This document shows positions 1 to 51,201 of a stretch of 54,560 nucleotides of DNA, piece by piece. Under the pieces are notes generated by a model. It did not search any database and was not told the DNA's origin. It saw only the letters and a list, made by a program, of their open reading frames with translations. The DNA comes from Octopus bimaculoides (taxonomy: Eukaryota): NCBI RefSeq assembly GCF_001194135.2, contig NC_068982.1, positions 181,381,346-181,435,905 on the forward strand. The letters run 5' to 3'. The translations under genes were made by a program, and so were the position numbers. Numbering within the stretch: position 1 is the stretch's first letter; each line of letters starts with the position of its first letter.

Positions 1-339
1 GACCGCATCTCGGGCAGGTCGGTCCGGTGGTTTTCGAACCGTGTCTGTAGATCTTCTCTCGAACTGGTAGTGCGTCTCGATAGCATTGCCAAGCCAGGGA
101 TCTCTGGAAATTATCCATAGGCCCCGGCCCGAACGTCGTCATGAAAAGGCGGGTTAGGAATTTCTCGTTGACACCCAGGTCTGCCCCGAGAGTGTCGTCA
201 GAGCTCCCCTCCACTAGTCCTCTATAGAACGCATTGGTCGTTTGGAAGCTGCACAAGTTTGATCCCGGACGGCAGAGCTGTTGTAGAGCTTGGTTACACT
301 CGCGGTGCCAATCGCCCAGTTTCGGTCTCTTCCTGATCC

Positions 340-1808: not shown

Positions 1809-1987
1809 TTGGAAAGGTCAATTCTGGCTACTTCAATACTATACGACAAGGGTAAAGGCTTTTGTCCTCTCTGTAAATTGGAGCTATTCCACATCTGTTC
1901 TCCAAGAATAATTTAGTGAACCAGATAACACAGAGAGCATACAGATGCCAGCATTAGAAGAAACTCACCTTCAGCTCGTTTCATTAA
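1809..1987 (+). mobile_element. Penelope-like element, C-terminal end of the GIY-YIG endonuclease (decayed)
   Basis: Translates as LERSILATSILYDKGKGFCPLCKLELFHIC then, after a frameshift, KNNLVNQITQRAYRCQH*KKLTFSSFH*. This fits the PLE C-terminal pattern W.IL....Y......C.LC..E..HI.....LLN.R.E....CRH. Confidence 0.65.
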
Positions 1988-1989
1988 TT

Positions 1990-2555
1990 TCATCTTTTTG
2001 ACTCGTTGATTTTTGGTGTTGTCACTTAAAGCATGCGGAACGTATCCTCCATACTTCGGAACCCTTCCCATCGTGTGAAGGTGTTTCCCTCTAGCAGTGT
2101 AAGAGCATTCCATATTCTCTGCCAGTTCCCTTGTCGTTTAACGAGAATTTTTGTGCAAAAATTGGTTTAATCGCTCCTCATCGAACTCAACAGGACGGCC
2201 AGAACGAGGTGCGTCTCTGTGAGTTCAAAATTTCCATTATTGAACTTGGCATACCAATCACGAACGGTTCTTTTAGCTATGATACCCTCTGAATACACAG
2301 TACAAATGTCGCGAGCAGCTTTTGCAGCCTTAGAACCTTGATCGAAAGCAAAAAGTAGGAGGTTTCGAAAACGATCGTTTTTCTTAACTGGACATTCCAC
2401 TTTAATGATCAGAAAATAAACTAAAATTAACTAGAAAAAAATAGATTCCAAAATGATTTTAAAATAGAATTCTCTGGCAAAATAGATTCCAAAATTTAAA
2501 AAGGCAATAAATTCCAAAGTTTAAAAAAACCGCGGGAACGTAGTTGGCAACACAA
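1990..2555 (-). mobile_element. mariner (Tc1/mariner DD34D) transposon 5' remnant: TIR plus frameshifted N-terminal HTH region
   Basis: ORF 2167-2400 gives RFRNLLLFAFDQGSKAAKAARDICTVYSEGIIAKRTVRDWYAKFNNGNFEL. It continues by frameshift as DAPRSGRPVEFDEERL...TTRELAENMECS...HLHTMGRVPKYGGYVPHALS (WVPHEL motif). The catalytic domain is absent. Confidence 0.9.
2526..2555 (-). repeat. mariner terminal inverted repeat (5' end) flanked by TA
   Basis: Minus strand reads TA|TTGTGTTGCCAACTACGTTCCCGCGGTTTT, which resembles mariner TIRs such as TTAGGTTGGTGCAAAAGTAATTGCGGTTTT. It lies about 130 bp upstream of the transposase start. Confidence 0.7.
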
Positions 2556-6047: not shown

Positions 6048-7141
6048 CTGCGATCAGAAGAGGATGAAAAATAAACTAACAACAGTTGCTAGTTATCTCG
6101 AAAATATACGTGAAATATTTTCTAGTCATCAACACTTAACTTCAATAATTGCCGAACGGGAACATCTGTTCCTTATTGCAGCAAAAAAAAAAAAATATCA
6201 CAGCGGTTGCAAGGAGTTTCTTTTGTAACAGAGTATTACGAATATAGCAGACAAATTAAATTTCCTTAATTAACAACTAGCATAGGAACTAAGAGAAATA
6301 ATTTAAAATATCATGATTTTATATACGCATGCGCTCTACGTTCCTATGACATCATTCAGAGCCCAGCCATGTTATTCCACATATATATCTAAGGAGTTTT
6401 TATTTTCAGAGAATTTCCACAGCACAATTCCCTATACGTTCGAATGTTCACGAATGTGCCTAGCATAATTATAAATATTTCAAACGACGTTCTTTCATGC
6501 GCCTTTTCAATATGTGCATAATTAACAAATGTAGCATTTATTTAAATATCAGAACGCTTGTTCTTATAAAACGACAAATTTTGTGTCCGTAGTTGATGGG
6601 GCGTGACAACATCATTCTTAGCGTAGTGATGTGTATTCACAAACAGTATCTATAATGAGAAAGATAGCGAGCTGGCTGAATCGTTACTGCACTGGACAAA
6701 ATACTTAACGTCATTTAGTCTGAATTTACATTCTGAGCTCAACATGGACATTTATGTTGTGGGGTCGACAAAATAAGTACCAGGTGAGCAATGGGGTCGA
6801 TGCAGCCGTCTTAATATAATAATGTTCATGTGTGCCTGTGTTACAGATTTATATAATCGAAGGAACATAGAATTTAAAGCCAAACGCAAAAAAAATTTCA
6901 CGCTGGTAGCTGAACAGAAAACATTGCAAAAATTATTAACCACTTTGAAATAGATCAATAATAATGTTAAATAATTTACGAATAATCTTCGCTAAATTAA
7001 ATTCTTAACAGTAAGGAAACATCGATTATTAGTAGAAAACTTGAAGGGTATGACTGTTTTGTGTAGTTTTCTGTATCGTTGGTCCTATGCAGTAGAGTAT
7101 TCACAGGCCTGAATTGATCATTAATAACTGGTGTTGATATG

Positions 7142-17416: not shown

Positions 17417-17514
17417 ATACGTATTTTCTATACCTTGTGGTATTTCATCATGGCCGGTATAAAGTCTGTCATACCGGCCATGATGAAATACCACAAGGTA
17501 TAGAAAATACGTAT
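17417..17514. repeat. perfect 44-bp inverted repeat with a 10-nt spacer
   Basis: 17417-17460 ATACGTATTTTCTATACCTTGTGGTATTTCATCATGGCCGGTAT is the exact reverse complement of 17471-17514. The spacer is AAAGTCTGTC. Confidence 0.97.
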
Positions 17515-18021
17515 GTGTTGTATACATTCTTTGTTGTATACATTCGCTTGCTTTCTTTCAAGATATTTAATGCGCTTAGCTTTGATTTTGGGGGCCAGCC
17601 AGATTTGAACAGATTCAAGTTTAACTTGCTGAAGTTGTAAGGATAATCTGGAAACTTGACTGAGATGAGAAGGCCACGAATGACACGTCCTTGTTTCCTC
17701 CTGTCCGTCTTTGTATCATCTATATGTCCGGATCGTTGATTGTCTTCTGTTATATAATTTAAATAATGAGAGTGATAAATTGAATATCAATTTAATTAAC
17801 ATAAATTTAAAACCGGTGGCCTAGGATATAGAAAAATTTTTGAATTCAGAAAAATTGTATTACATGCGTCGAAGAAGAGATGACAACTAAGTGGACATCC
17901 ATTATGATAGAAAGTGATCATCTACGATCTAACCACAAAGAAAAGAAAGATTTCTAGAAAATTCAGCAAACACCAGAACGTAAGCGAGTAAGACAAATGA
18001 AAATATACAGAATAAAGAATT

Positions 18022-18089
18022 AATCGTAGACCGGTTTCCCCATTAACTAATTTACTTATGTAAAACATCCCTGGCACGTCAGTATGACC
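18022..18089 (-). ncRNA. type I hammerhead ribozyme, degenerate copy
   Basis: GGUCAUA CUGACGU GCCA [29 nt] UGGG GAAAC CG GUC UACGAUU. It carries A9 to U, a G-G mismatch at the base of stem II and one A-C mismatch in stem I. Confidence 0.75.
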
Positions 18090-18547
18090 GTTATAATACA
18101 ATATAATTGCAGAACTATACACGAGTTGTCCTCATAAAATTAGACGTGTGTACAGTTCTACCGATTAGATTGGGGTTATTTTCAAATATCTTCACTCTGG
18201 CGCGCTAAGTACCGGAAACAATTCTGCAGAAGATAATTCGCTGCAGTAAATGTTGCCGGTTAGAGAACATAATTATTTAAAATTTAAATAATTAGGGCGA
18301 TAAATTGAATATCAATTTAATTAATATCAATTTAAAACCAGTGGCCTAGCATATAGAGAATTCTGAAAATTCAGAAAAATTGTATTAAATGCGTATAAGA
18401 AGGAATGACCACTCAGTGGACATCTATTATGCTAGTAATAGATCACCTACGATCTAACCACAAAGAAAAGAATGTTCTCTACAAAACTTCAGCAAACACC
18501 AGAAATTAAGCGGGTAAGGCAAATGAAAATATACGAAATAAAGAATT

Positions 18548-18615
18548 AATCGTAGACCGGTTTCGCCATTAACTAATGTACTTACATAAACCGACCCTGA
18601 CTCGTCAGTACGACC
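18548..18615 (-). ncRNA. type I hammerhead ribozyme, intact core
   Basis: GGUCGUA CUGACGA GUCA [29 nt] UGGC GAAAC CG GUC^UACGAUU. Stem I is 7 bp (GGUCGUA/UACGAUU) and stem II is GUCA/UGGC. The CUGANGA and GAAA core is invariant, the triplet is GUC, and stem III is the palindrome ACCGGU. Predicted cut between 18555 and 18554. Confidence 0.88.
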
Positions 18616-18879
18616 GGTGTAATACAATATAAGGTGCAGAACTATACACGAGTTGTCCTCATAAAATTAGACGTGTGTACAGTTCTACCGATTACACTGG
18701 GGTTATTTTCAAATGTTTTCAAATGTCTTTGTGGATTATCAGCTAGTAGAATCTGAATCGTACTTTGCCATCTTACCATCTGCAGACACTTTCCTTGTGT
18801 TTTTTGCACGATTTTTCATATTTATTCGTGTTTCTTGCACCTGATTTCCCTCAAAATCCACTTCTACATCCTCATGTCT

Positions 18880-18987
18880 TACACACACACACACACACAC
18901 CCACAAACACACACACACACACACACATACACACACACACACCCACACACACACACACACACACTCAAACACACACACACACACAAA
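18880..18987. repeat. (CA)n microsatellite
   Basis: Direct reading of the sequence. Confidence 0.95.
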
Positions 18988-21054: not shown

Positions 21055-21262
21055 CTAAACATAGAGGGGACAAACAAGGAGAGACGAAGAGATTGAGTTG
21101 ATTACATCACCCCAGTGCGTAACTAGTATTTGTTTAATCAAAACCGAGAGGATGAAGGGCAAAGTCGACCTCGGCGGAATTTCAACTCAGAACGTCACCG
21201 CAGACGAAATAGCGCTAAGCATTTTGCCCGGCGTGCTAACGATTCTGACAGTTCGCGGCCTT
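21055..21262 (-). mobile_element. tRNA-derived SINE family B
   Basis: 'ggatgaagggcaaagtcgacctcggcggaatttcaactcagaacgt...gcattttgcccggcgtgctaacgattctg' is shared with the other copies. Confidence 0.8.
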
Positions 21263-34769: not shown

Positions 34770-34945
34770 CGGTGGGCGAGGCTAGTCAATTGCAACGGCC
34801 TTAGTGTTCAAATGGTACTTATTTTATCGACCCCGAACGGATGAAAGGCAAAGTCGACCTCCGCGCAATTTGGACTCAGAACCCCAAAGGTGAAAGAAAT
34901 GCCATGCCGCTACGCATGTTTCCCAGTGTGCTAACGATTCTTTCC
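34770..34945 (-). mobile_element. tRNA-derived SINE family B
   Basis: 'ggtacttattttatcgaccccgaacggatgaaaggcaaagtcgacctccgcgcaatttggactcagaac...gtgctaacgattct'. Confidence 0.85.
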
Positions 34946-35250: not shown

Positions 35251-35702
35251 ATAGCAGTAATAGTAGTAGCAATAGTTGTTATTCTTATAGTATTATTCTC
35301 GACAGTGGCAGTAGCGGTAGTGGTAGAGTTCGTTGTTTTTGTAGCAATGATGTGGAGACAGTTTTAGCTGAAAAATCTTTATTATTGTCTTTGTCAATTT
35401 TGTAGTTGTTAATATCATTATAATTACTAGTATTGTTATTACATATATGTAAAAGTTTACTACTACCACCATGACTGCTACTTCTCTTTCGGATACTACT
35501 ACTGCATCTACCGGTAGCACTGCCGCTTCTGCCAACACCACTGTTACTACAACTACCATTCATAACCGACCAGAATGAGCACCCAATCAGAACGACTGAC
35601 CGTAGATAACAAAAACAAATCAACAGTATAGGAAATATCCCACCATGTATATAAATCGTGATATAAAAATGGAATCAGAAACAGCACATATTTGTCACTC
35701 AC

Positions 35703-36508
35703 CAGGGGATTTCTTCAGTTTAGCTCACAGATTTTAAAATTTATTTTTAATAAAACAGTTTGAAGCTTCGTATACTGATGTAGTTACTCACGCTGAATAC
35801 GGTTTACTTTCAACGATTTTGACACAATTTCGTATTTTAGAAGCTATTTAGTGTAAAATTGTAGTATTTGGATAATTTTAGCAAATCAACGACGGGTATT
35901 CAGCTGAGGCAACTAATGCTGTTTGCGATAATAATCGAAGAGCAACAACTTCCGGATCATATCTACTAAATGTCACCTCTCTGTTCTATTTTATTTTTGC
36001 TTACTGCCTGTGTTGCATATTACACGCTTTTCTTTTTCAGGGTTTTCGATCGCGTCTTTGTACATTTGGCAGTGTTGATTATTTTCATCAGTGTGATCAT
36101 TTCCATCAATCTGTTGTCGCTTATTTTTGTTTCTGGCCTATGTTGCATACTGCACGCTTTATTTCCTTTTCGATCGTCTCTTTGTACATTTACATTTTCC
36201 CCACTCGTACAAAGAGGCGATCGAAAAGAAAGTGTAATATGCAACACAGGCAGTAAACAAAAGTAAAATAGAACAGAGTGGTGGCATTTAGTAGAGATGA
36301 TCCGGAAGTTGTTGCTTTTCGATTACTATCGTACATAGTAGAAGGGTTTCTTCAGCTGAATTAACGGAATAACTTCTAAAGTACGAAATTTTGTCAAAAA
36401 TGATGAAAGTAAACCATGTTCAGCGTGAGAAATCACACCAGTATATGAAGTTTCAAACTGCTTAGTTGAAAAAAAAATTAATCTGTGAGCTAAACTGAAG
36501 AGATCCTG
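35703..36508. mobile_element. foldback / large MITE-like element of about 800 bp with long imperfect inverted arms
   Basis: 35713-35733 is the exact reverse complement of 36480-36500. 35935-36024 pairs with 36231-36322 at high identity, and pairing continues between these blocks. The interior has a tandem duplication 'tgttgcata..cacgcttt...ttcgatcg..tctttgtacattt'. Confidence 0.85.
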
Positions 36509-44581: not shown

Positions 44582-47247
44582 TTACAAATCACAACCATAT
44601 GTTAATCACTGCTAAAGATTTTGCCTTTACCTGCATATGATTTGGCAAAAGCTAAAATCAAATGTCAAAATTTACATGTCTTGGCAATCTAGAACAAGGC
44701 AGAATATCATTCTTTTTAATGAGATCACATGTTATATAATCGGAAACTTTGGTCACTGCATCAACGTACTAGCTTGGTATTTATCAATGTTGTTATGGTG
44801 GTTTGGAAGTAGCTGGGCCCTAGTGTGGCAGGCCTATGATGCACAACATTCTAACCTTGATAGTACGCATGTTGTTATCTCTTTACAAACCTTTACTTGC
44901 TGGGTGAGTTATGGCTGATATGTCTAGCATCTCGAATGACCTCTCCGAATATCTAGTGTTCGTTCTTGATTACATCAGCATAATTATTCTACTGATACAT
45001 AGAATAAGGTCTTTTTCCTCCGCTCTCATCTCCCACTTTCTCTCTCACTGTCCCTCCTCTTTATCTTAATATATTGCATTTGTACTTTCATTACTGCCCT
45101 TCACTCGGTCTGCATCATTGTTATCTATAATACCACATCCCCATTTACGAGTATCGCATGATATTTTCTAAATAATATGGTAACAACTTAATTCTTTTAT
45201 CTTTCTTTCATTGTCTTTCTCTTCACTCCTCTATTGGTCTACGTTCTTTCTGCATATCTCTATCTTTCTCTGTTGCTCTTAAAATTCTACGTTTCCTGTT
45301 TCGTCAGGTTACTTGTCACACATATTTAGTCACACATATTTAGTCACACAGATATAATGACACGCAAGTATAATCATAGATTACATGTCATTACATTACT
45401 CCAATTTAACTACATTTCATTATTTTTTTATATTATCTTTTTTTTATTATTCACATTTTGTTCTCGAGAGAACAAAATGTATATATATATATATATAGTA
45501 TATGTATCTATATATATATAGTTGCCCACACACATATTACTGAGCTTTTATTAATTTATATTATTGCATACATCTAATGAAATTATGAGTATCCTCTAAT
45601 CCTCTAATGTAATATAAATGACGATTGTTATACTGTTCTAATTGTAACTTAGAAAATCTGAAACAGAATGCCATTTATAACTTGAAGAGAACATAAAAGG
45701 CAAAATTTACCCAAATTGTTTACAATGTTATGCGTGAAAAGAGAAACATTGAAAGTAATATCGAAAATCTTCCACAAACAGTTAACATACCCAGACATAA
45801 TGCGCAAGTACAGCTAGTAGTTTTGTAAGAAAGCATCGCTTTTCATTGCAATTATAAAATGCATGCAAGCAAGATTAAGTATTCTCTAATGGCGCATGAT
45901 ATTTTATATTGAAACGCTTCAGTAGCAAGGTTAAACATTGCATATATGTGATTGCATCATGTTACACAAACACATACATTTCATTCACTTATTCCCTACT
46001 TCAGCTGTCAGTAATGACGAATGGTGTTTATATGTTTGGAGGAGATGTGATATTGCGCGGACATTTGGGATTCAGAATTAACGCATGGAAATCTAACTGC
46101 AAAATGGAATATCAGATACTTGTGTGCGTATGCATACATATAGATAGATAAAGAGACGCATAGACAAACAGGGAGACAGTACAAAAAGATAAACAGAGAG
46201 ATTGATAGATTTTTAAACAGATAGAAACACATGCAATATGGGGAGGGGGTGATACATTTCTGACGATTAGGTGATTCGTTTTCTCATTGGTGTGAATCAC
46301 TATATTGCTACAACATGATTAAATCTTACGAAACAAACAGATTTAAATGTCACCACACTTTAGCAGTAAGACATCGACACACAAACGCATGCGTACTTGC
46401 ACAACCACATACACGCCACACATACTCACGCACGCTCACAAACACATATATTTCCATGTTCTTATATTTGAAACAGTTCGTTTATATGTATGCATCAATG
46501 TATGTACAATTACGCACGTAATAACAAATGCGTAAATGTACCCTTTGTTTTTTCAAGTACAAAATCTACAGTTTGGAATTGTTTCACGGTATCACACACA
46601 CAAATACGCGTGCATAAAAACACAGGCCCTGTGTGTATAGTAAAAAGGATGAGTGTGCGTGCGCGCGTTTATATATATAGATATAGCGTATCCATAATTT
46701 AACTGAAAATTTGAAAAAGTTTGAAAAATTAAGGATAAATCAACATAGTTTATTGGAAAATATGGGCGACAAAGCACATTTCTATTACAAATATCTCGTC
46801 AATTCAATTTATCTTATATTTGATACATACAAAAAATTGTGGATGCTGTGAAGATAATTTAGGAACACATTTATGTATTTATGAAAAAATATCATAAACA
46901 GAACATTCAGCACATACCTTTGGTATTATGCACGTATAGCTTGGTTAGTTATCTGTTACGAGTGTTCATCATGCATATACTGTACATAAATATATATGTA
47001 TACACACACATTTATATAATATANNNNNNNNNNNNNNNNNNNNNNNNNNNNNNNNNNNNNNNNNNNNNNNNNNNNNNNNNNNNNTATATATGTATATCTA
47101 TACATACATACATATAAACATATACATATATATATGTGTGTGTAATGCAAAAAATATCCATATTTATTAAAAGAAGGAAAATGCACAGAGTTTACATAGT
47201 TTTAATATAATCTTTAATATATTTTATATGTAAAAGTGTATTGTGTT

Positions 47248-50194: not shown

Positions 50195-50582
50195 CTTTGG
50201 TCACTGCATCAACGTACTAGCTTGGTATTTATCAATGTTGTTATGGTGGTTTGGAAGTAGTTGGGCCCTAGTGTGGCAGGCCTATGATGCACAACATTCT
50301 AACCTTGATAGTACGCATGTTGTTATCTCTTTACAAACCTTTACTTGCTGGGTGAGTTATGGCTGATATGTCTAGCATCTCGAATGACCTCTCCGAATAT
50401 CTAGTGTTCGCTCTTGATTACATCAGCATAATTATTCTACTGATACATAGAATAAGGTCTTTTTCCTCCGCTCTCATCTCCCACTTTCTCTCTCACTGTC
50501 CCTCCTCTTTATCTTAATATATTGCATTTGTACTTTCATTACTGCCCTTCACTCGGTCTGCATCATTGTTATCTATAATACC
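50195..50582 (+). repeat. 388-bp near-identical direct copy of 44747-45134
   Basis: Aligned by eye; two substitutions seen (agctggg/agttggg and cgttctt/cgctctt). Ends at the gap. Confidence 0.95.
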
Positions 50583-50853
50583 NNNNNNNNNNNNNNNNNN
50601 NNNNNNNNNNNNNNNNNNNNNNNNNNNNNNNNNNNNNNNNNNNNNNNNNNNNNNNNNNNNNNNNNNNNNNNNNNNNNNNNNNNNNNNNNNNNNNNNNNNN
50701 NNNNNNNNNNNNNNNNNNNNNNNNNNNNNNNNNNNNNNNNNNNNNNNNNNNNNNNNNNNNNNNNNNNNNNNNNNNNNNNNNNNNNNNNNNNNNNNNNNNN
50801 NNNNNNNNNNNNNNNNNNNNNNNNNNNNNNNNNNNNNNNNNNNNNNNNNNNNN

Positions 50854-50889
50854 AAGTAAAATTAGTCCAATCGTCACATATTTCCTGTC
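50854..50889 (-). repeat. 36-bp exact inverted copy of 34347-34382
   Basis: aagtaaaattagtccaatcgtcacatatttcctgtc is the reverse complement of gacaggaaatatgtgacgattggactaattttactt. Starts at the gap edge. Confidence 0.95.
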
Positions 50890-50894
50890 TAATC

Positions 50895-51201
50895 TTGTAG
50901 TTGTTAATATCATTATAATTACTAGTATTGTTATTACATATATGTAAAAGTTTACTACTACCACCATGACTGCTACTTCTCTTTCGGATACTACTACTGC
51001 ATCTACCGGTAGCACTGCCGCTTCTGCCAACACCACTGTTACTACAACTACCATTCATAACCGACCAGAATGAGCACCCAATCAGAACGACTGACCGTAG
51101 ATAAGAAAAACAAATCAACAGTATAGGAAATATCCCACCATGTATATAAATCGTGATATAAAAACGGAATCAGAAACAGCACATATTTGTCACTCACCAG
51201 G
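50895..51201 (+). repeat. 307-bp near-identical direct copy of 35400-35706
   Basis: Aligned by eye; two substitutions seen (gataac/gataag and aaaat/aaaac). Confidence 0.95.

What the first reader, a model, noticed from the sequence alone, without database searches (positions are those of the whole stretch)
17755..18714. Retrozyme-like tandem array: a 526-nt monomer delimited by two type I hammerhead ribozymes
Seen: about 1.8 head-to-tail copies of a non-coding unit, roughly 85% identical by eye. On the minus strand the array starts about 160 nt upstream of the first GUC site (18555), contains one complete cleavage-to-cleavage monomer (18554 to 18029, 526 nt), and ends 274 nt into the next. 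The unit is rich in hairpins and has no coding capacity. Established: non-LTR retrozymes of several animals are tandem genomic repeats with type I hammerheads whose transcripts self-cleave into monomers and circularise, and Penelope-like elements carry hammerheads with palindromic stem III in their pLTRs. Inference: this is the genomic footprint of a cephalopod circular-RNA retroelement, a partial multimer as expected from rolling reverse transcription, probably mobilised by PLE reverse transcriptase (PLE remnants are abundant here). The monomer is longer than the few-hundred-nt metazoan retrozymes I know of; whether this family is described I cannot verify.
Basis: partly seen in the sequence, partly recalled or inferred. 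Interest (0 to 1): 0.9.

Follow-up and report, generated by a model that had tools for sequence, protein, structure and literature searches.

The report
Decayed hammerhead-ribozyme tandem repeat (retrozyme relic)
This is a worn-out 1.84-copy tandem insertion of a 526-nt non-coding, hairpin-rich element that carries a self-cleaving hammerhead ribozyme motif, an ordinary member of a known class of animal mobile elements in which only one of the two ribozymes is still intact.

Summary
The tandem repeat is real: + strand 17753-18721, period 525-527 nt, 1.84 units, 87% identity, non-coding, GC 33%. On the minus strand the upstream unit carries a complete type I hammerhead (core C3 at 18608, cleavage after C18555). 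It has helix I of 7 bp, helix II of 4 bp around a 29-nt insert, and helix III of one A:U pair over a palindromic CCGG loop, which is the dimer-dependent metazoan architecture. It is the only such motif in 54.5 kb (about 0.02 expected by chance) and matches Rfam Hammerhead_1 at 19.9 bits, below the 34-bit gathering score. The downstream "hammerhead" is dead: A9 is U, C11.1 is G, helix I is broken, and there is no Rfam match. So the 526-nt "monomer" is not bounded by two working ribozymes. The unit is unusually self-complementary (z about -6; window controls average +0.3). I found no reverse-transcriptase or GIY-YIG remnant, no second hammerhead and no other copy of the unit anywhere in the window. 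No relatives turned up in any searchable collection. Best reading: a fossil partial dimer of a non-LTR retrozyme, that is, a non-autonomous Penelope-like-element derivative. The kind is known and the monomer length lies within the published range. The cephalopod origin, family size and RNA circles could not be tested.

The parts
17753..18721 (-). Whole tandem array, 969 nt, 1.84 units of about 526-527 nt, with layout X-Y-X on the minus strand
   Evidence: the repeat finder spacing 525-527; alignments; blastn and nhmmer boundaries 18721 and 17751-17753
18195..18721 (-). Unit A, a complete 527-nt unit (X 18278-18721 plus Y 18195-18277); the better-preserved copy
   Evidence: Alignment. The shared part folds to -107.6 kcal/mol against -83.4 for unit B
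17753..18194 (-). Unit B, a partial unit (X only, 442 nt) that ends about 4 nt past the centre of a 12+1+12 palindrome that is complete in unit A
   Evidence: Alignment; sequence at the ends
18548..18615 (-). Intact type I hammerhead motif. Helix I is 18609-18615 paired with 18548-18554. The core CUGACGA is 18608-18602. Helix II is 18601-18598 paired with 18568-18565, enclosing a 29-nt insert. GAAA is 18564-18561. The palindromic helix III ACCGGU is 18561-18556. The predicted cleavage is after C17 = 18555
   Evidence: Descriptor scans; shuffles; Rfam RF00163 at 19.9 bits, E 0.0079 in a 101-nt search; double-hammerhead energy -20.1 kcal/mol against -2.0 for the monomer fold
18022..18089 (-). 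Relic of the hammerhead in unit B: A9>U (18076), C11.1>G (18039), helix I G>A (18085). The substrate side GAAACCGGUC/UACGAUU is unchanged
   Evidence: Alignment; constraint analysis gives helix I 2 bp and helix II 0 bp; no Rfam hammerhead match at E<=10
18636..18688 (-). Long imperfect hairpin (14-bp stem) just upstream of the hammerhead. It lies in the best-conserved block of the unit (95% identity between units), and the unit B copy is at 18109-18161
   Evidence: the repeat finder family D6 at 95%; consensus fold
18195..18294 (-). Palindrome TAATTATTTAAA-T-TTTAAATAATTA (18270-18294), which straddles the X/Y boundary, and the 48-nt hairpin CCGG...CCGG (18212-18259). This shows that the single-copy segment Y belongs to the element
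   Evidence: Sequence; MFE structure

Best explanation
This is the fossil of one insertion of a non-autonomous, hammerhead-bearing tandem-repeat retroelement: a non-LTR retrozyme, which current literature regards as a derivative of the terminal repeats of Penelope-like elements. The steps below are inferred from published work on retrozymes, not shown here. Tandem copies of the roughly 526-nt unit are transcribed on the minus strand. Because helix III is only A:U plus the palindrome CCGG, two neighbouring hammerheads pair through ACCGGU into a double hammerhead and cut after GUC, releasing unit-length RNA with 5'-OH and 2',3'-cyclic phosphate ends. A host RtcB-type tRNA ligase circularises this RNA. 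The highly base-paired circle, or a multimer, is then copied for more than one round by a PLE reverse transcriptase and inserted by its GIY-YIG endonuclease, which gives non-integer multimers such as this 1.84-mer. What the sequence shows directly is the following: the tandem array, one complete hammerhead motif, the dimer-type helix III, the exceptional self-complementarity, and the absence of coding capacity. At this locus the element is dead. The two units differ by 12.6% with no compensatory changes, and the downstream hammerhead has lost A9, the G10.1-C11.1 pair and helix I. A transcript of this locus could therefore be cut at one site at most. Under the double-hammerhead model that site is after C18029, cut by the intact enzyme strand of unit A. 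No unit-length monomer or circle can arise from here.
For: The tandem repeat has a period of 525-527 nt and 87% identity. A single complete type I hammerhead occurs in 54.5 kb on both strands, with 0.017-0.02 expected per window from dinucleotide shuffles and 0 of 300 shuffles at the observed stem quality. In a targeted search Hammerhead_1 is the only Rfam family matched, across the full model and at the predicted position and strand. Helix I of 7 bp, helix II of 4 bp and helix III of 1 bp plus a palindromic tetraloop match the canonical metazoan type I architecture described in PMC4209133 and for axolotl HHR_Amex1 in PMC7229834. The double-hammerhead conformation evaluates to -20.1 kcal/mol, against -2.0 for the monomer hammerhead fold. 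The unit has z about -6 against window controls averaging +0.3, and the minus strand is 22 kcal/mol more stable than the plus strand. GC is 33%, and there is no ORF, no Pfam domain and no tRNA-like part. A copy number of 1.84 is below the minimum of 2.0 expected from a simple DNA tandem duplication (inference). The palindrome straddling the X/Y boundary shows that Y is part of the unit. Published unit lengths span 51-972 bp, and dimers are a common form (10.64898/2026.07.22.740005).
Against: There are only two copies, both in this array, and no family member could be retrieved anywhere, so covariation support for the ribozyme is nil. The Rfam score is below the gathering threshold, and scaled to the whole window its E-value would be about 4. 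The hit is absent from the window-wide and 1.7-kb searches. The minimum-free-energy fold of the motif is not the hammerhead, and its energy is not better than shuffles. Helix II closes an unusually large 29-nt insert, so catalytic competence is uncertain. Only 1 of 9 predicted Xenopus dimers cleaved in vitro in the 2026 preprint. The candidate target-site duplication is not significant (P = 0.09). No PLE coding remnant occurs within the window. The array ends do not coincide with the cleavage sites.
Confidence: 0.62

Rival explanations
1. A minisatellite born at the DNA level. A 5'-truncated Penelope-like element left its hammerhead-bearing terminal fragment here, and replication slippage or unequal crossing-over duplicated it locally. 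Under this reading no circular RNA or independent retrozyme family is involved.
For: Most genomic PLE-type hammerheads are solitary and belong to truncated PLEs (PMC4209133). The 2026 preprint explicitly proposes local amplification of PLE termini into tandem repeats. Here there is no significant target-site duplication, no other copy in the window, and the array ends are unrelated to the cleavage sites.
Against: A single DNA duplication gives at least 2.0 copies. The observed 1.84 needs an extra deletion of at least 85 nt that ends exactly inside a palindrome. No RT or EN remnant lies next to the array or anywhere in the window. The hammerhead lacks the marks of PLE minimal hammerheads (bulged nucleotide after A9, helix II of 6-8 bp, short helix I) and looks like the canonical tandem-repeat type.
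Confidence: 0.2
2. A chance hammerhead-like motif inside an unrelated hairpin-rich, AT-rich tandem duplication. Under this reading there is no ribozyme ancestry.
For: The Rfam score of 19.9 bits is below the 34-bit gathering score, and the hit is found only in a targeted 101-nt search. The thermodynamic fold does not favour the hammerhead. Helix II is weak with a 29-nt insert. There is no covariation evidence. The homologous motif in unit B does not conform. A gigabase genome would contain hundreds of chance matches to a loose descriptor at 0.02 per 54 kb.
Against: The expectation per window is 0.017-0.02 for loose descriptors and 0 of 300 shuffles at the observed quality. The motif sits in the 2% of the window that is a retrozyme-sized tandem repeat. 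Beyond the invariant core it also shares CUGAcGAGUC and CGAAAC with the Rfam consensus. It has the G10.1-C11.1 pair and the palindromic helix III that the literature lists as non-random hallmarks (PMC4209133).
Confidence: 0.12
3. The locus is a currently active retrozyme. Its transcript would self-cleave at both GUC sites and yield a 526-nt circular RNA.
For: The substrate side (GAAACCGGUC/UACGAUU) is identical in both units. Unit A keeps an intact enzyme strand.
Against: Unit B carries A9>U, loss of the G10.1-C11.1 pair and a broken helix I. Core positions other than N7 do not tolerate substitution (classical hammerhead mutagenesis, from my own knowledge). [quoted passage not shown] The 12.6% divergence without compensatory changes indicates neutral decay.
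Confidence: 0.05

Closest known systems
Non-LTR retrozymes of metazoans (Cervera & de la Pena 2020, PMC7229834; Li, Clavereau & Pollet 2026 preprint, 10.64898/2026.07.22.740005)
   Same: Both are head-to-tail repeats of a non-coding, low-GC, strongly self-paired unit carrying a type I hammerhead. The unit length of 526 nt lies within the reported 51-972 bp. Dimers and partial multimers are common in that class.
   Different: Only one of the two units keeps a complete hammerhead. Helix II encloses a 29-nt insert instead of a short loop 2. No family, RNA or circle could be demonstrated. The unit is longer than the 170-400 nt of the experimentally studied cases.
Amphibian satellite 2 / axolotl HHR_Amex1 hammerheads (dimer-dependent type I)
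   Same: Helix III is a single base pair capped by a palindromic tetraloop, which predicts activity only as a double hammerhead. The context is a tandem repeat.
   Different: There is no sequence similarity outside the core. The conserved loop 1-loop 2 contact nucleotides could not be recognised. The repeat unit is 526 nt rather than about 330-350 nt.
Minimal hammerheads in the pseudo-LTRs of Penelope-like elements (Cervera & de la Pena 2014, PMC4209133)
   Same: Both have a palindromic helix III region and a G10.1-C11.1 pair. Both are presumed to function as dimers and are associated with partial tandem insertions.
   Different: No RT/GIY-YIG ORF lies between or near the repeats. There is no bulged nucleotide between A9 and G10.1. 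Helix II is 4 bp rather than 6-8 bp, and helix I is 7 bp rather than 2-5 bp.
Rfam Hammerhead_1 (RF00163), including the 235 loci annotated in the giant squid genome (PMC6962438)
   Same: The match covers the full model, with CUGAcGAGUC...CGAAAC...GUC and an open helix I.
   Different: The score is 19.9 bits, below the 34-bit gathering score, because of the 31-nt insertion in helix II. Standard Rfam annotation would therefore miss it.

Membership tests
Hammerhead ribozyme, type I (Rfam RF00163) | Invariant core C3 U4 G5 A6 N7 G8 A9 ... G12 A13 A14 ... U16.1 H17 | tested here: met
   Unit A reads CUGACGA at 18608-18602, GAAA at 18564-18561 and UC at 18556-18555. Unit B fails this test (A9>U).
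Hammerhead ribozyme, type I (Rfam RF00163) | Three helices around the core, with helix I open and the G10.1-C11.1 pair present | tested here: met
   Helix I is 7 bp, helix II is 4 bp starting with G-C, and helix III is A:U plus CCGG.
Hammerhead ribozyme, type I (Rfam RF00163) | Score at or above the curated gathering threshold (34 bits) | tested here: not met
   The score is 19.9 bits in a 101-nt search. Nothing is reported at window scale.
Hammerhead ribozyme, type I (Rfam RF00163) | Helices supported by covariation among homologues | not testable with these tools
   Only two copies exist in the window, and no relatives are retrievable.
Hammerhead ribozyme, type I (Rfam RF00163) | Site-specific self-cleavage | not testable with these tools
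   This needs in vitro transcription.
Non-LTR retrozyme | Head-to-tail tandem repeats of a short, non-coding, low-GC unit | tested here: met
   There are 1.84 units of 526 nt, GC is 33%, and there are no ORFs or domains.
Non-LTR retrozyme | A complete type I hammerhead in each of at least two consecutive units (working definition of an active element, 2026 preprint) | tested here: not met
   Unit A is intact and unit B is mutated in the core and helices.
Non-LTR retrozyme | Multi-copy family dispersed in the genome | not testable with these tools
   There is no other copy in the window, and the source genome is not in any searchable collection.
Non-LTR retrozyme | Expression as unit-length linear and circular RNA | not testable with these tools
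   No transcriptome access.
Non-LTR retrozyme | Co-occurrence with autonomous PLEs in the same genome | tested here: inconclusive
   No RVT or GIY-YIG domain was found in stop-free segments of at least 50 aa across the 54.5-kb window.
PLE pseudo-LTR | Direct repeats flanking an RT plus GIY-YIG ORF | tested here: not met
   The repeats are contiguous with a 526-nt period, and no such ORF lies between them or elsewhere in the window.
PLE pseudo-LTR | Minimal hammerhead traits: extra nucleotide after A9, helix II of 6-8 bp, short helix I, and helix III absent or palindromic | tested here: not met
   Only the palindromic helix III is shared. There is no bulge, helix II is 4 bp and helix I is 7 bp (criteria from PMC4209133).

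The most novel reading that the evidence does not exclude
The locus is a relic of a still undescribed retrozyme family of this (reportedly cephalopod) genome. Its roughly 526-nt, highly structured circular RNA would carry a type I hammerhead with a large structured insertion in helix II, which standard Rfam annotation misses. Other genomic copies could still be active and expressed.
Probability: 0.3. Interest if true: 0.45.

Novelty: new member of a known kind. Interest (0 to 1): 0.3.

Why it matters
If the family exists genome-wide, it would add a mollusc lineage beyond mussels to the animals that make small ribozyme-processed circular RNAs. It would also show that hammerheads with a long helix II insertion escape the Rfam gathering threshold, so that hammerhead counts in such genomes are underestimates. 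The locus itself is a dead copy and has no evident function. Its main value is as a seed sequence for a genome-wide search.

Tried and rejected
1. I tried to recover related copies through translated pseudo-ORFs. The word-index search, the profile search of 1.84 billion representatives and three exact look-ups all found nothing.

2. I ran DNA pattern scans of the public collections. There were no hits in viral or prokaryotic contigs. The three metagenome hits were GC-rich microbial chance matches with unrelated flanks.

3. I tried to identify the organism from transposon remnants. The LINE-like piece had no homologue, and the mariner piece matched ant proteins only. The cephalopod claim remains unverified.

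4. I tested a candidate target-site duplication, TGTCTT(C)TGT. It is not significant (P = 0.09 against 20,000 random junction pairs).

5. I looked for structure conservation between the two units. There were no two-sided compensatory changes, and unit B breaks unit A's pairs at the neutral rate (21 observed, 23 expected). RNAalifold on two sequences is uninformative.

6. I considered a SINE-like or tRNA-derived origin. There is no tRNA-like sequence.

7. I looked for other ribozyme classes or an opposite-polarity hammerhead. None was found.

Full report
**Observation**

The + strand interval 17753-18721 contains a direct repeat with start-to-start spacing of 525-527 nt. blastn and nhmmer of the array against the whole window recover only the two units, with boundaries at 18721 and 17751-17753. 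The shared part aligns over 444 columns with 56 differences: 87.4% identity, 25 transitions, 29 transversions and 2 single-base gaps. On the minus strand the layout is X (18721-18278), Y (18277-18195), X (18194-17753), which is 1.84 units of about 526 nt. TRF did not report the repeat because its longest period is 500.

**Is Y part of the unit?**

A perfect 12+1+12 palindrome (18294-18270) straddles the X/Y boundary. Unit B stops about 4 nt past its centre. Y also holds a 48-nt CCGG...CCGG hairpin. Y is therefore element sequence rather than a spacer between two independent insertions.

**The hammerheads**

On the minus strand, unit A reads GGUCGUA-CUGACGA-GUCA[29 nt]UGGC-GAAA-CCGG-UC/UACGAUU. 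Every invariant core nucleotide is present. Its helices are:

| Helix | Description |
|---|---|
| I | 7 bp and open, which makes the motif type I |
| II | 4 bp, starting with G10.1-C11.1 |
| III | The A15.1:U16.1 pair over CCGG, so that ACCGGU is a 6-nt palindrome |

Two descriptor scans of both strands of the window, one for canonical and one for PLE-type minimal hammerheads, found only this site. Dinucleotide shuffles give 0.017 and 0.02 hits per window. None of 300 shuffles reaches the observed stem quality.

Rfam gives no hit at gathering thresholds, nor in the 1.7-kb or whole-window E-value searches. In a 101-nt search the only family reported is Hammerhead_1, matched over the full model at 18549-18614 on the minus strand, at 19.9 bits and E = 0.0079. 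The gathering score is 34 bits. The penalty comes from the 31-nt insertion in helix II. Scaled to the whole window that E-value would be about 4, so Rfam alone would not establish the motif. The descriptor statistics and the context carry the case.

The equivalent search on unit B finds no hammerhead. Unit B has three damaging changes:

- A9>U at 18076.
- C11.1>G at 18039.
- G>A at 18085, which leaves helix I with 2 bp.

Core positions other than N7 do not tolerate substitution (classical mutagenesis, from my own knowledge), so the downstream ribozyme is dead. The claim of a monomer "delimited by two hammerheads" is thus only half true.

**Folding of the motif**

The free-energy minimum of the 81-nt motif is not the hammerhead fold and is no better than shuffles (z = 0.1). 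The constrained monomer hammerhead is worth only -2.0 kcal/mol. A double hammerhead of two A-type motifs, with ACCGGU paired between them, evaluates to -20.1 kcal/mol. This matches the literature. Most metazoan type I hammerheads have helix I of 6 bp, helix II of 4 bp and helix III of 1-2 bp capped by a small palindromic loop. They are inefficient as monomers and active as dimers in tandem repeats (PMC4209133; axolotl HHR_Amex1 in PMC7229834).

In a double hammerhead the enzyme strand of one unit acts on the substrate strand of the other (Forster et al. 1988, from my own knowledge). For the genomic A-B pair, only the half-site made of enzyme A and substrate B is intact. At most one cut is therefore expected, and no unit-length RNA.

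**The unit as an RNA**

The cleavage-to-cleavage 526-mer folds to -142.7 kcal/mol. The z-scores and controls are:

| Sequence | Result |
|---|---|
| 526-mer, linear, minus strand | z = -6.2 (tool); z = -5.5 (own shuffles) |
| 526-mer, circular | z = -6.3 |
| Plus strand | -120.4 kcal/mol, z = -4.8 |
| 20 random 526-nt segments of the same window | mean z +0.29, sd 1.38, minimum -2.65 |

The element is thus exceptionally self-paired, as retrozyme and viroid-like RNAs are, with a modest preference for the hammerhead strand. GC is 33%, the same as the window. The longest ORFs are 57 and 66 aa, without Pfam hits or homologues. There is no tRNA-like part.

**Decay**

There are no two-sided compensatory changes between the units. 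Unit B's substitutions break unit A's predicted pairs at the neutral rate (21 observed, 23 expected). The shared part folds to -107.6 kcal/mol in A and -83.4 in B. The locus therefore looks like an old insertion drifting neutrally, with A the better-preserved copy. The intact hammerhead in A is compatible with chance survival.

**Surroundings**

I scanned all stop-free segments of at least 40 aa between about 14.0 and 22.5 kb, and of at least 50 aa across the rest of the window, against Pfam. The only hit was an HTH_48 domain of a Mos1-type mariner remnant at 2170-2430 on the minus strand. There was no reverse transcriptase and no GIY-YIG endonuclease. No other hammerhead of either type is present. 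The statement that PLE remnants are abundant here is therefore unsupported. The caveats are that 8.6% of the window is N and that very short remnants would be missed. A (GT)n tract lies 160 nt upstream, but it is not at the junction. The candidate target-site duplication is not significant (P = 0.09).

**Relatives**

None could be obtained. Pseudo-ORF protein searches, exact look-ups and DNA pattern scans of viral, metagenomic and prokaryotic collections returned either nothing or chance microbial matches. Copy number, phase variation, covariation and PLE adjacency across the genome remain untested. The organism could not be identified.

**Interpretation**

The best-supported reading is a fossil partial dimer of a non-LTR retrozyme, that is, a non-autonomous derivative of Penelope-like elements (confidence about 0.6). 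A copy number of 1.84 favours more-than-unit-length copying of a circular or multimeric RNA over a simple DNA duplication. A simple duplication yields at least 2.0 copies and would need an extra deletion to reach 1.84 (inference).

The main rival is local DNA-level amplification of a truncated PLE terminus, a route explicitly discussed in the 2026 preprint (about 0.2). A chance motif gets about 0.1. An active locus is very unlikely.

**Comparison and novelty**

Type I hammerheads in tandem repeats are well known in animals, including a mussel (PMC7229834). The giant squid genome has 235 Hammerhead_1 loci annotated (PMC6962438). Retrozyme consensus lengths of 51-972 bp are reported (10.64898/2026.07.22.740005), so 526 nt is not exceptional. 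The only unusual trait is the 29-nt insert in helix II, which puts the motif below Rfam's threshold. This is a new member of a known kind, represented here by a dead copy. Interest is modest.

Noticed in passing
window 17417-17514: A perfect 44-nt inverted repeat with a 10-nt spacer lies about 240 nt downstream of the array. It gives only sub-threshold matches to miRNA hairpin models (MIR8007 at 45 bits against a gathering score of 195; mir-2001 at 35.5 against 74). It could be a very young foldback or an assembly artefact.
   Followed up: partly
window 1916-2430 (minus strand): A Mos1-type mariner transposase remnant with a Pfam HTH_48 hit (E 9e-16). Its closest database proteins are from ants (Cataglyphis, Camponotus), as expected for a horizontally spread mariner.
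   Followed up: partly
window 35392-35706 vs 50886-51201; 44747-45134 vs 50195-50582: Two dispersed repeats are 98.7% and 99.5% identical and meet next to the N-run at 50583-50853. This is either a very recent mobile element mosaic or an assembly redundancy.
   Followed up: no
window 21126-21246 and 34815-34941 (also 6755-6991 minus strand): A recurrent short element whose translation contains ...GTYFIDPERMKGKVDL.... The copies are about 74% identical and it is probably a SINE-like dispersed repeat.
   Followed up: no
window 2-330 (minus strand): A stop-free segment ending ...LAWQCYRDALPVREKIYRHGSKTTGPTCPRCG resembles the C-terminal zinc-knuckle end of non-LTR (LINE) ORF2 proteins by eye. It has no Pfam hit and no database homologue.
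   Followed up: partly
window 18881-18985 and many other sites: The window is microsatellite-rich ((AC)n, (AT)n, (TAGA)n) and contains 15 N-runs totalling 4715 N, which is typical of a draft eukaryotic scaffold. These tracts produce many spurious sub-threshold Rfam miRNA matches.
   Followed up: no
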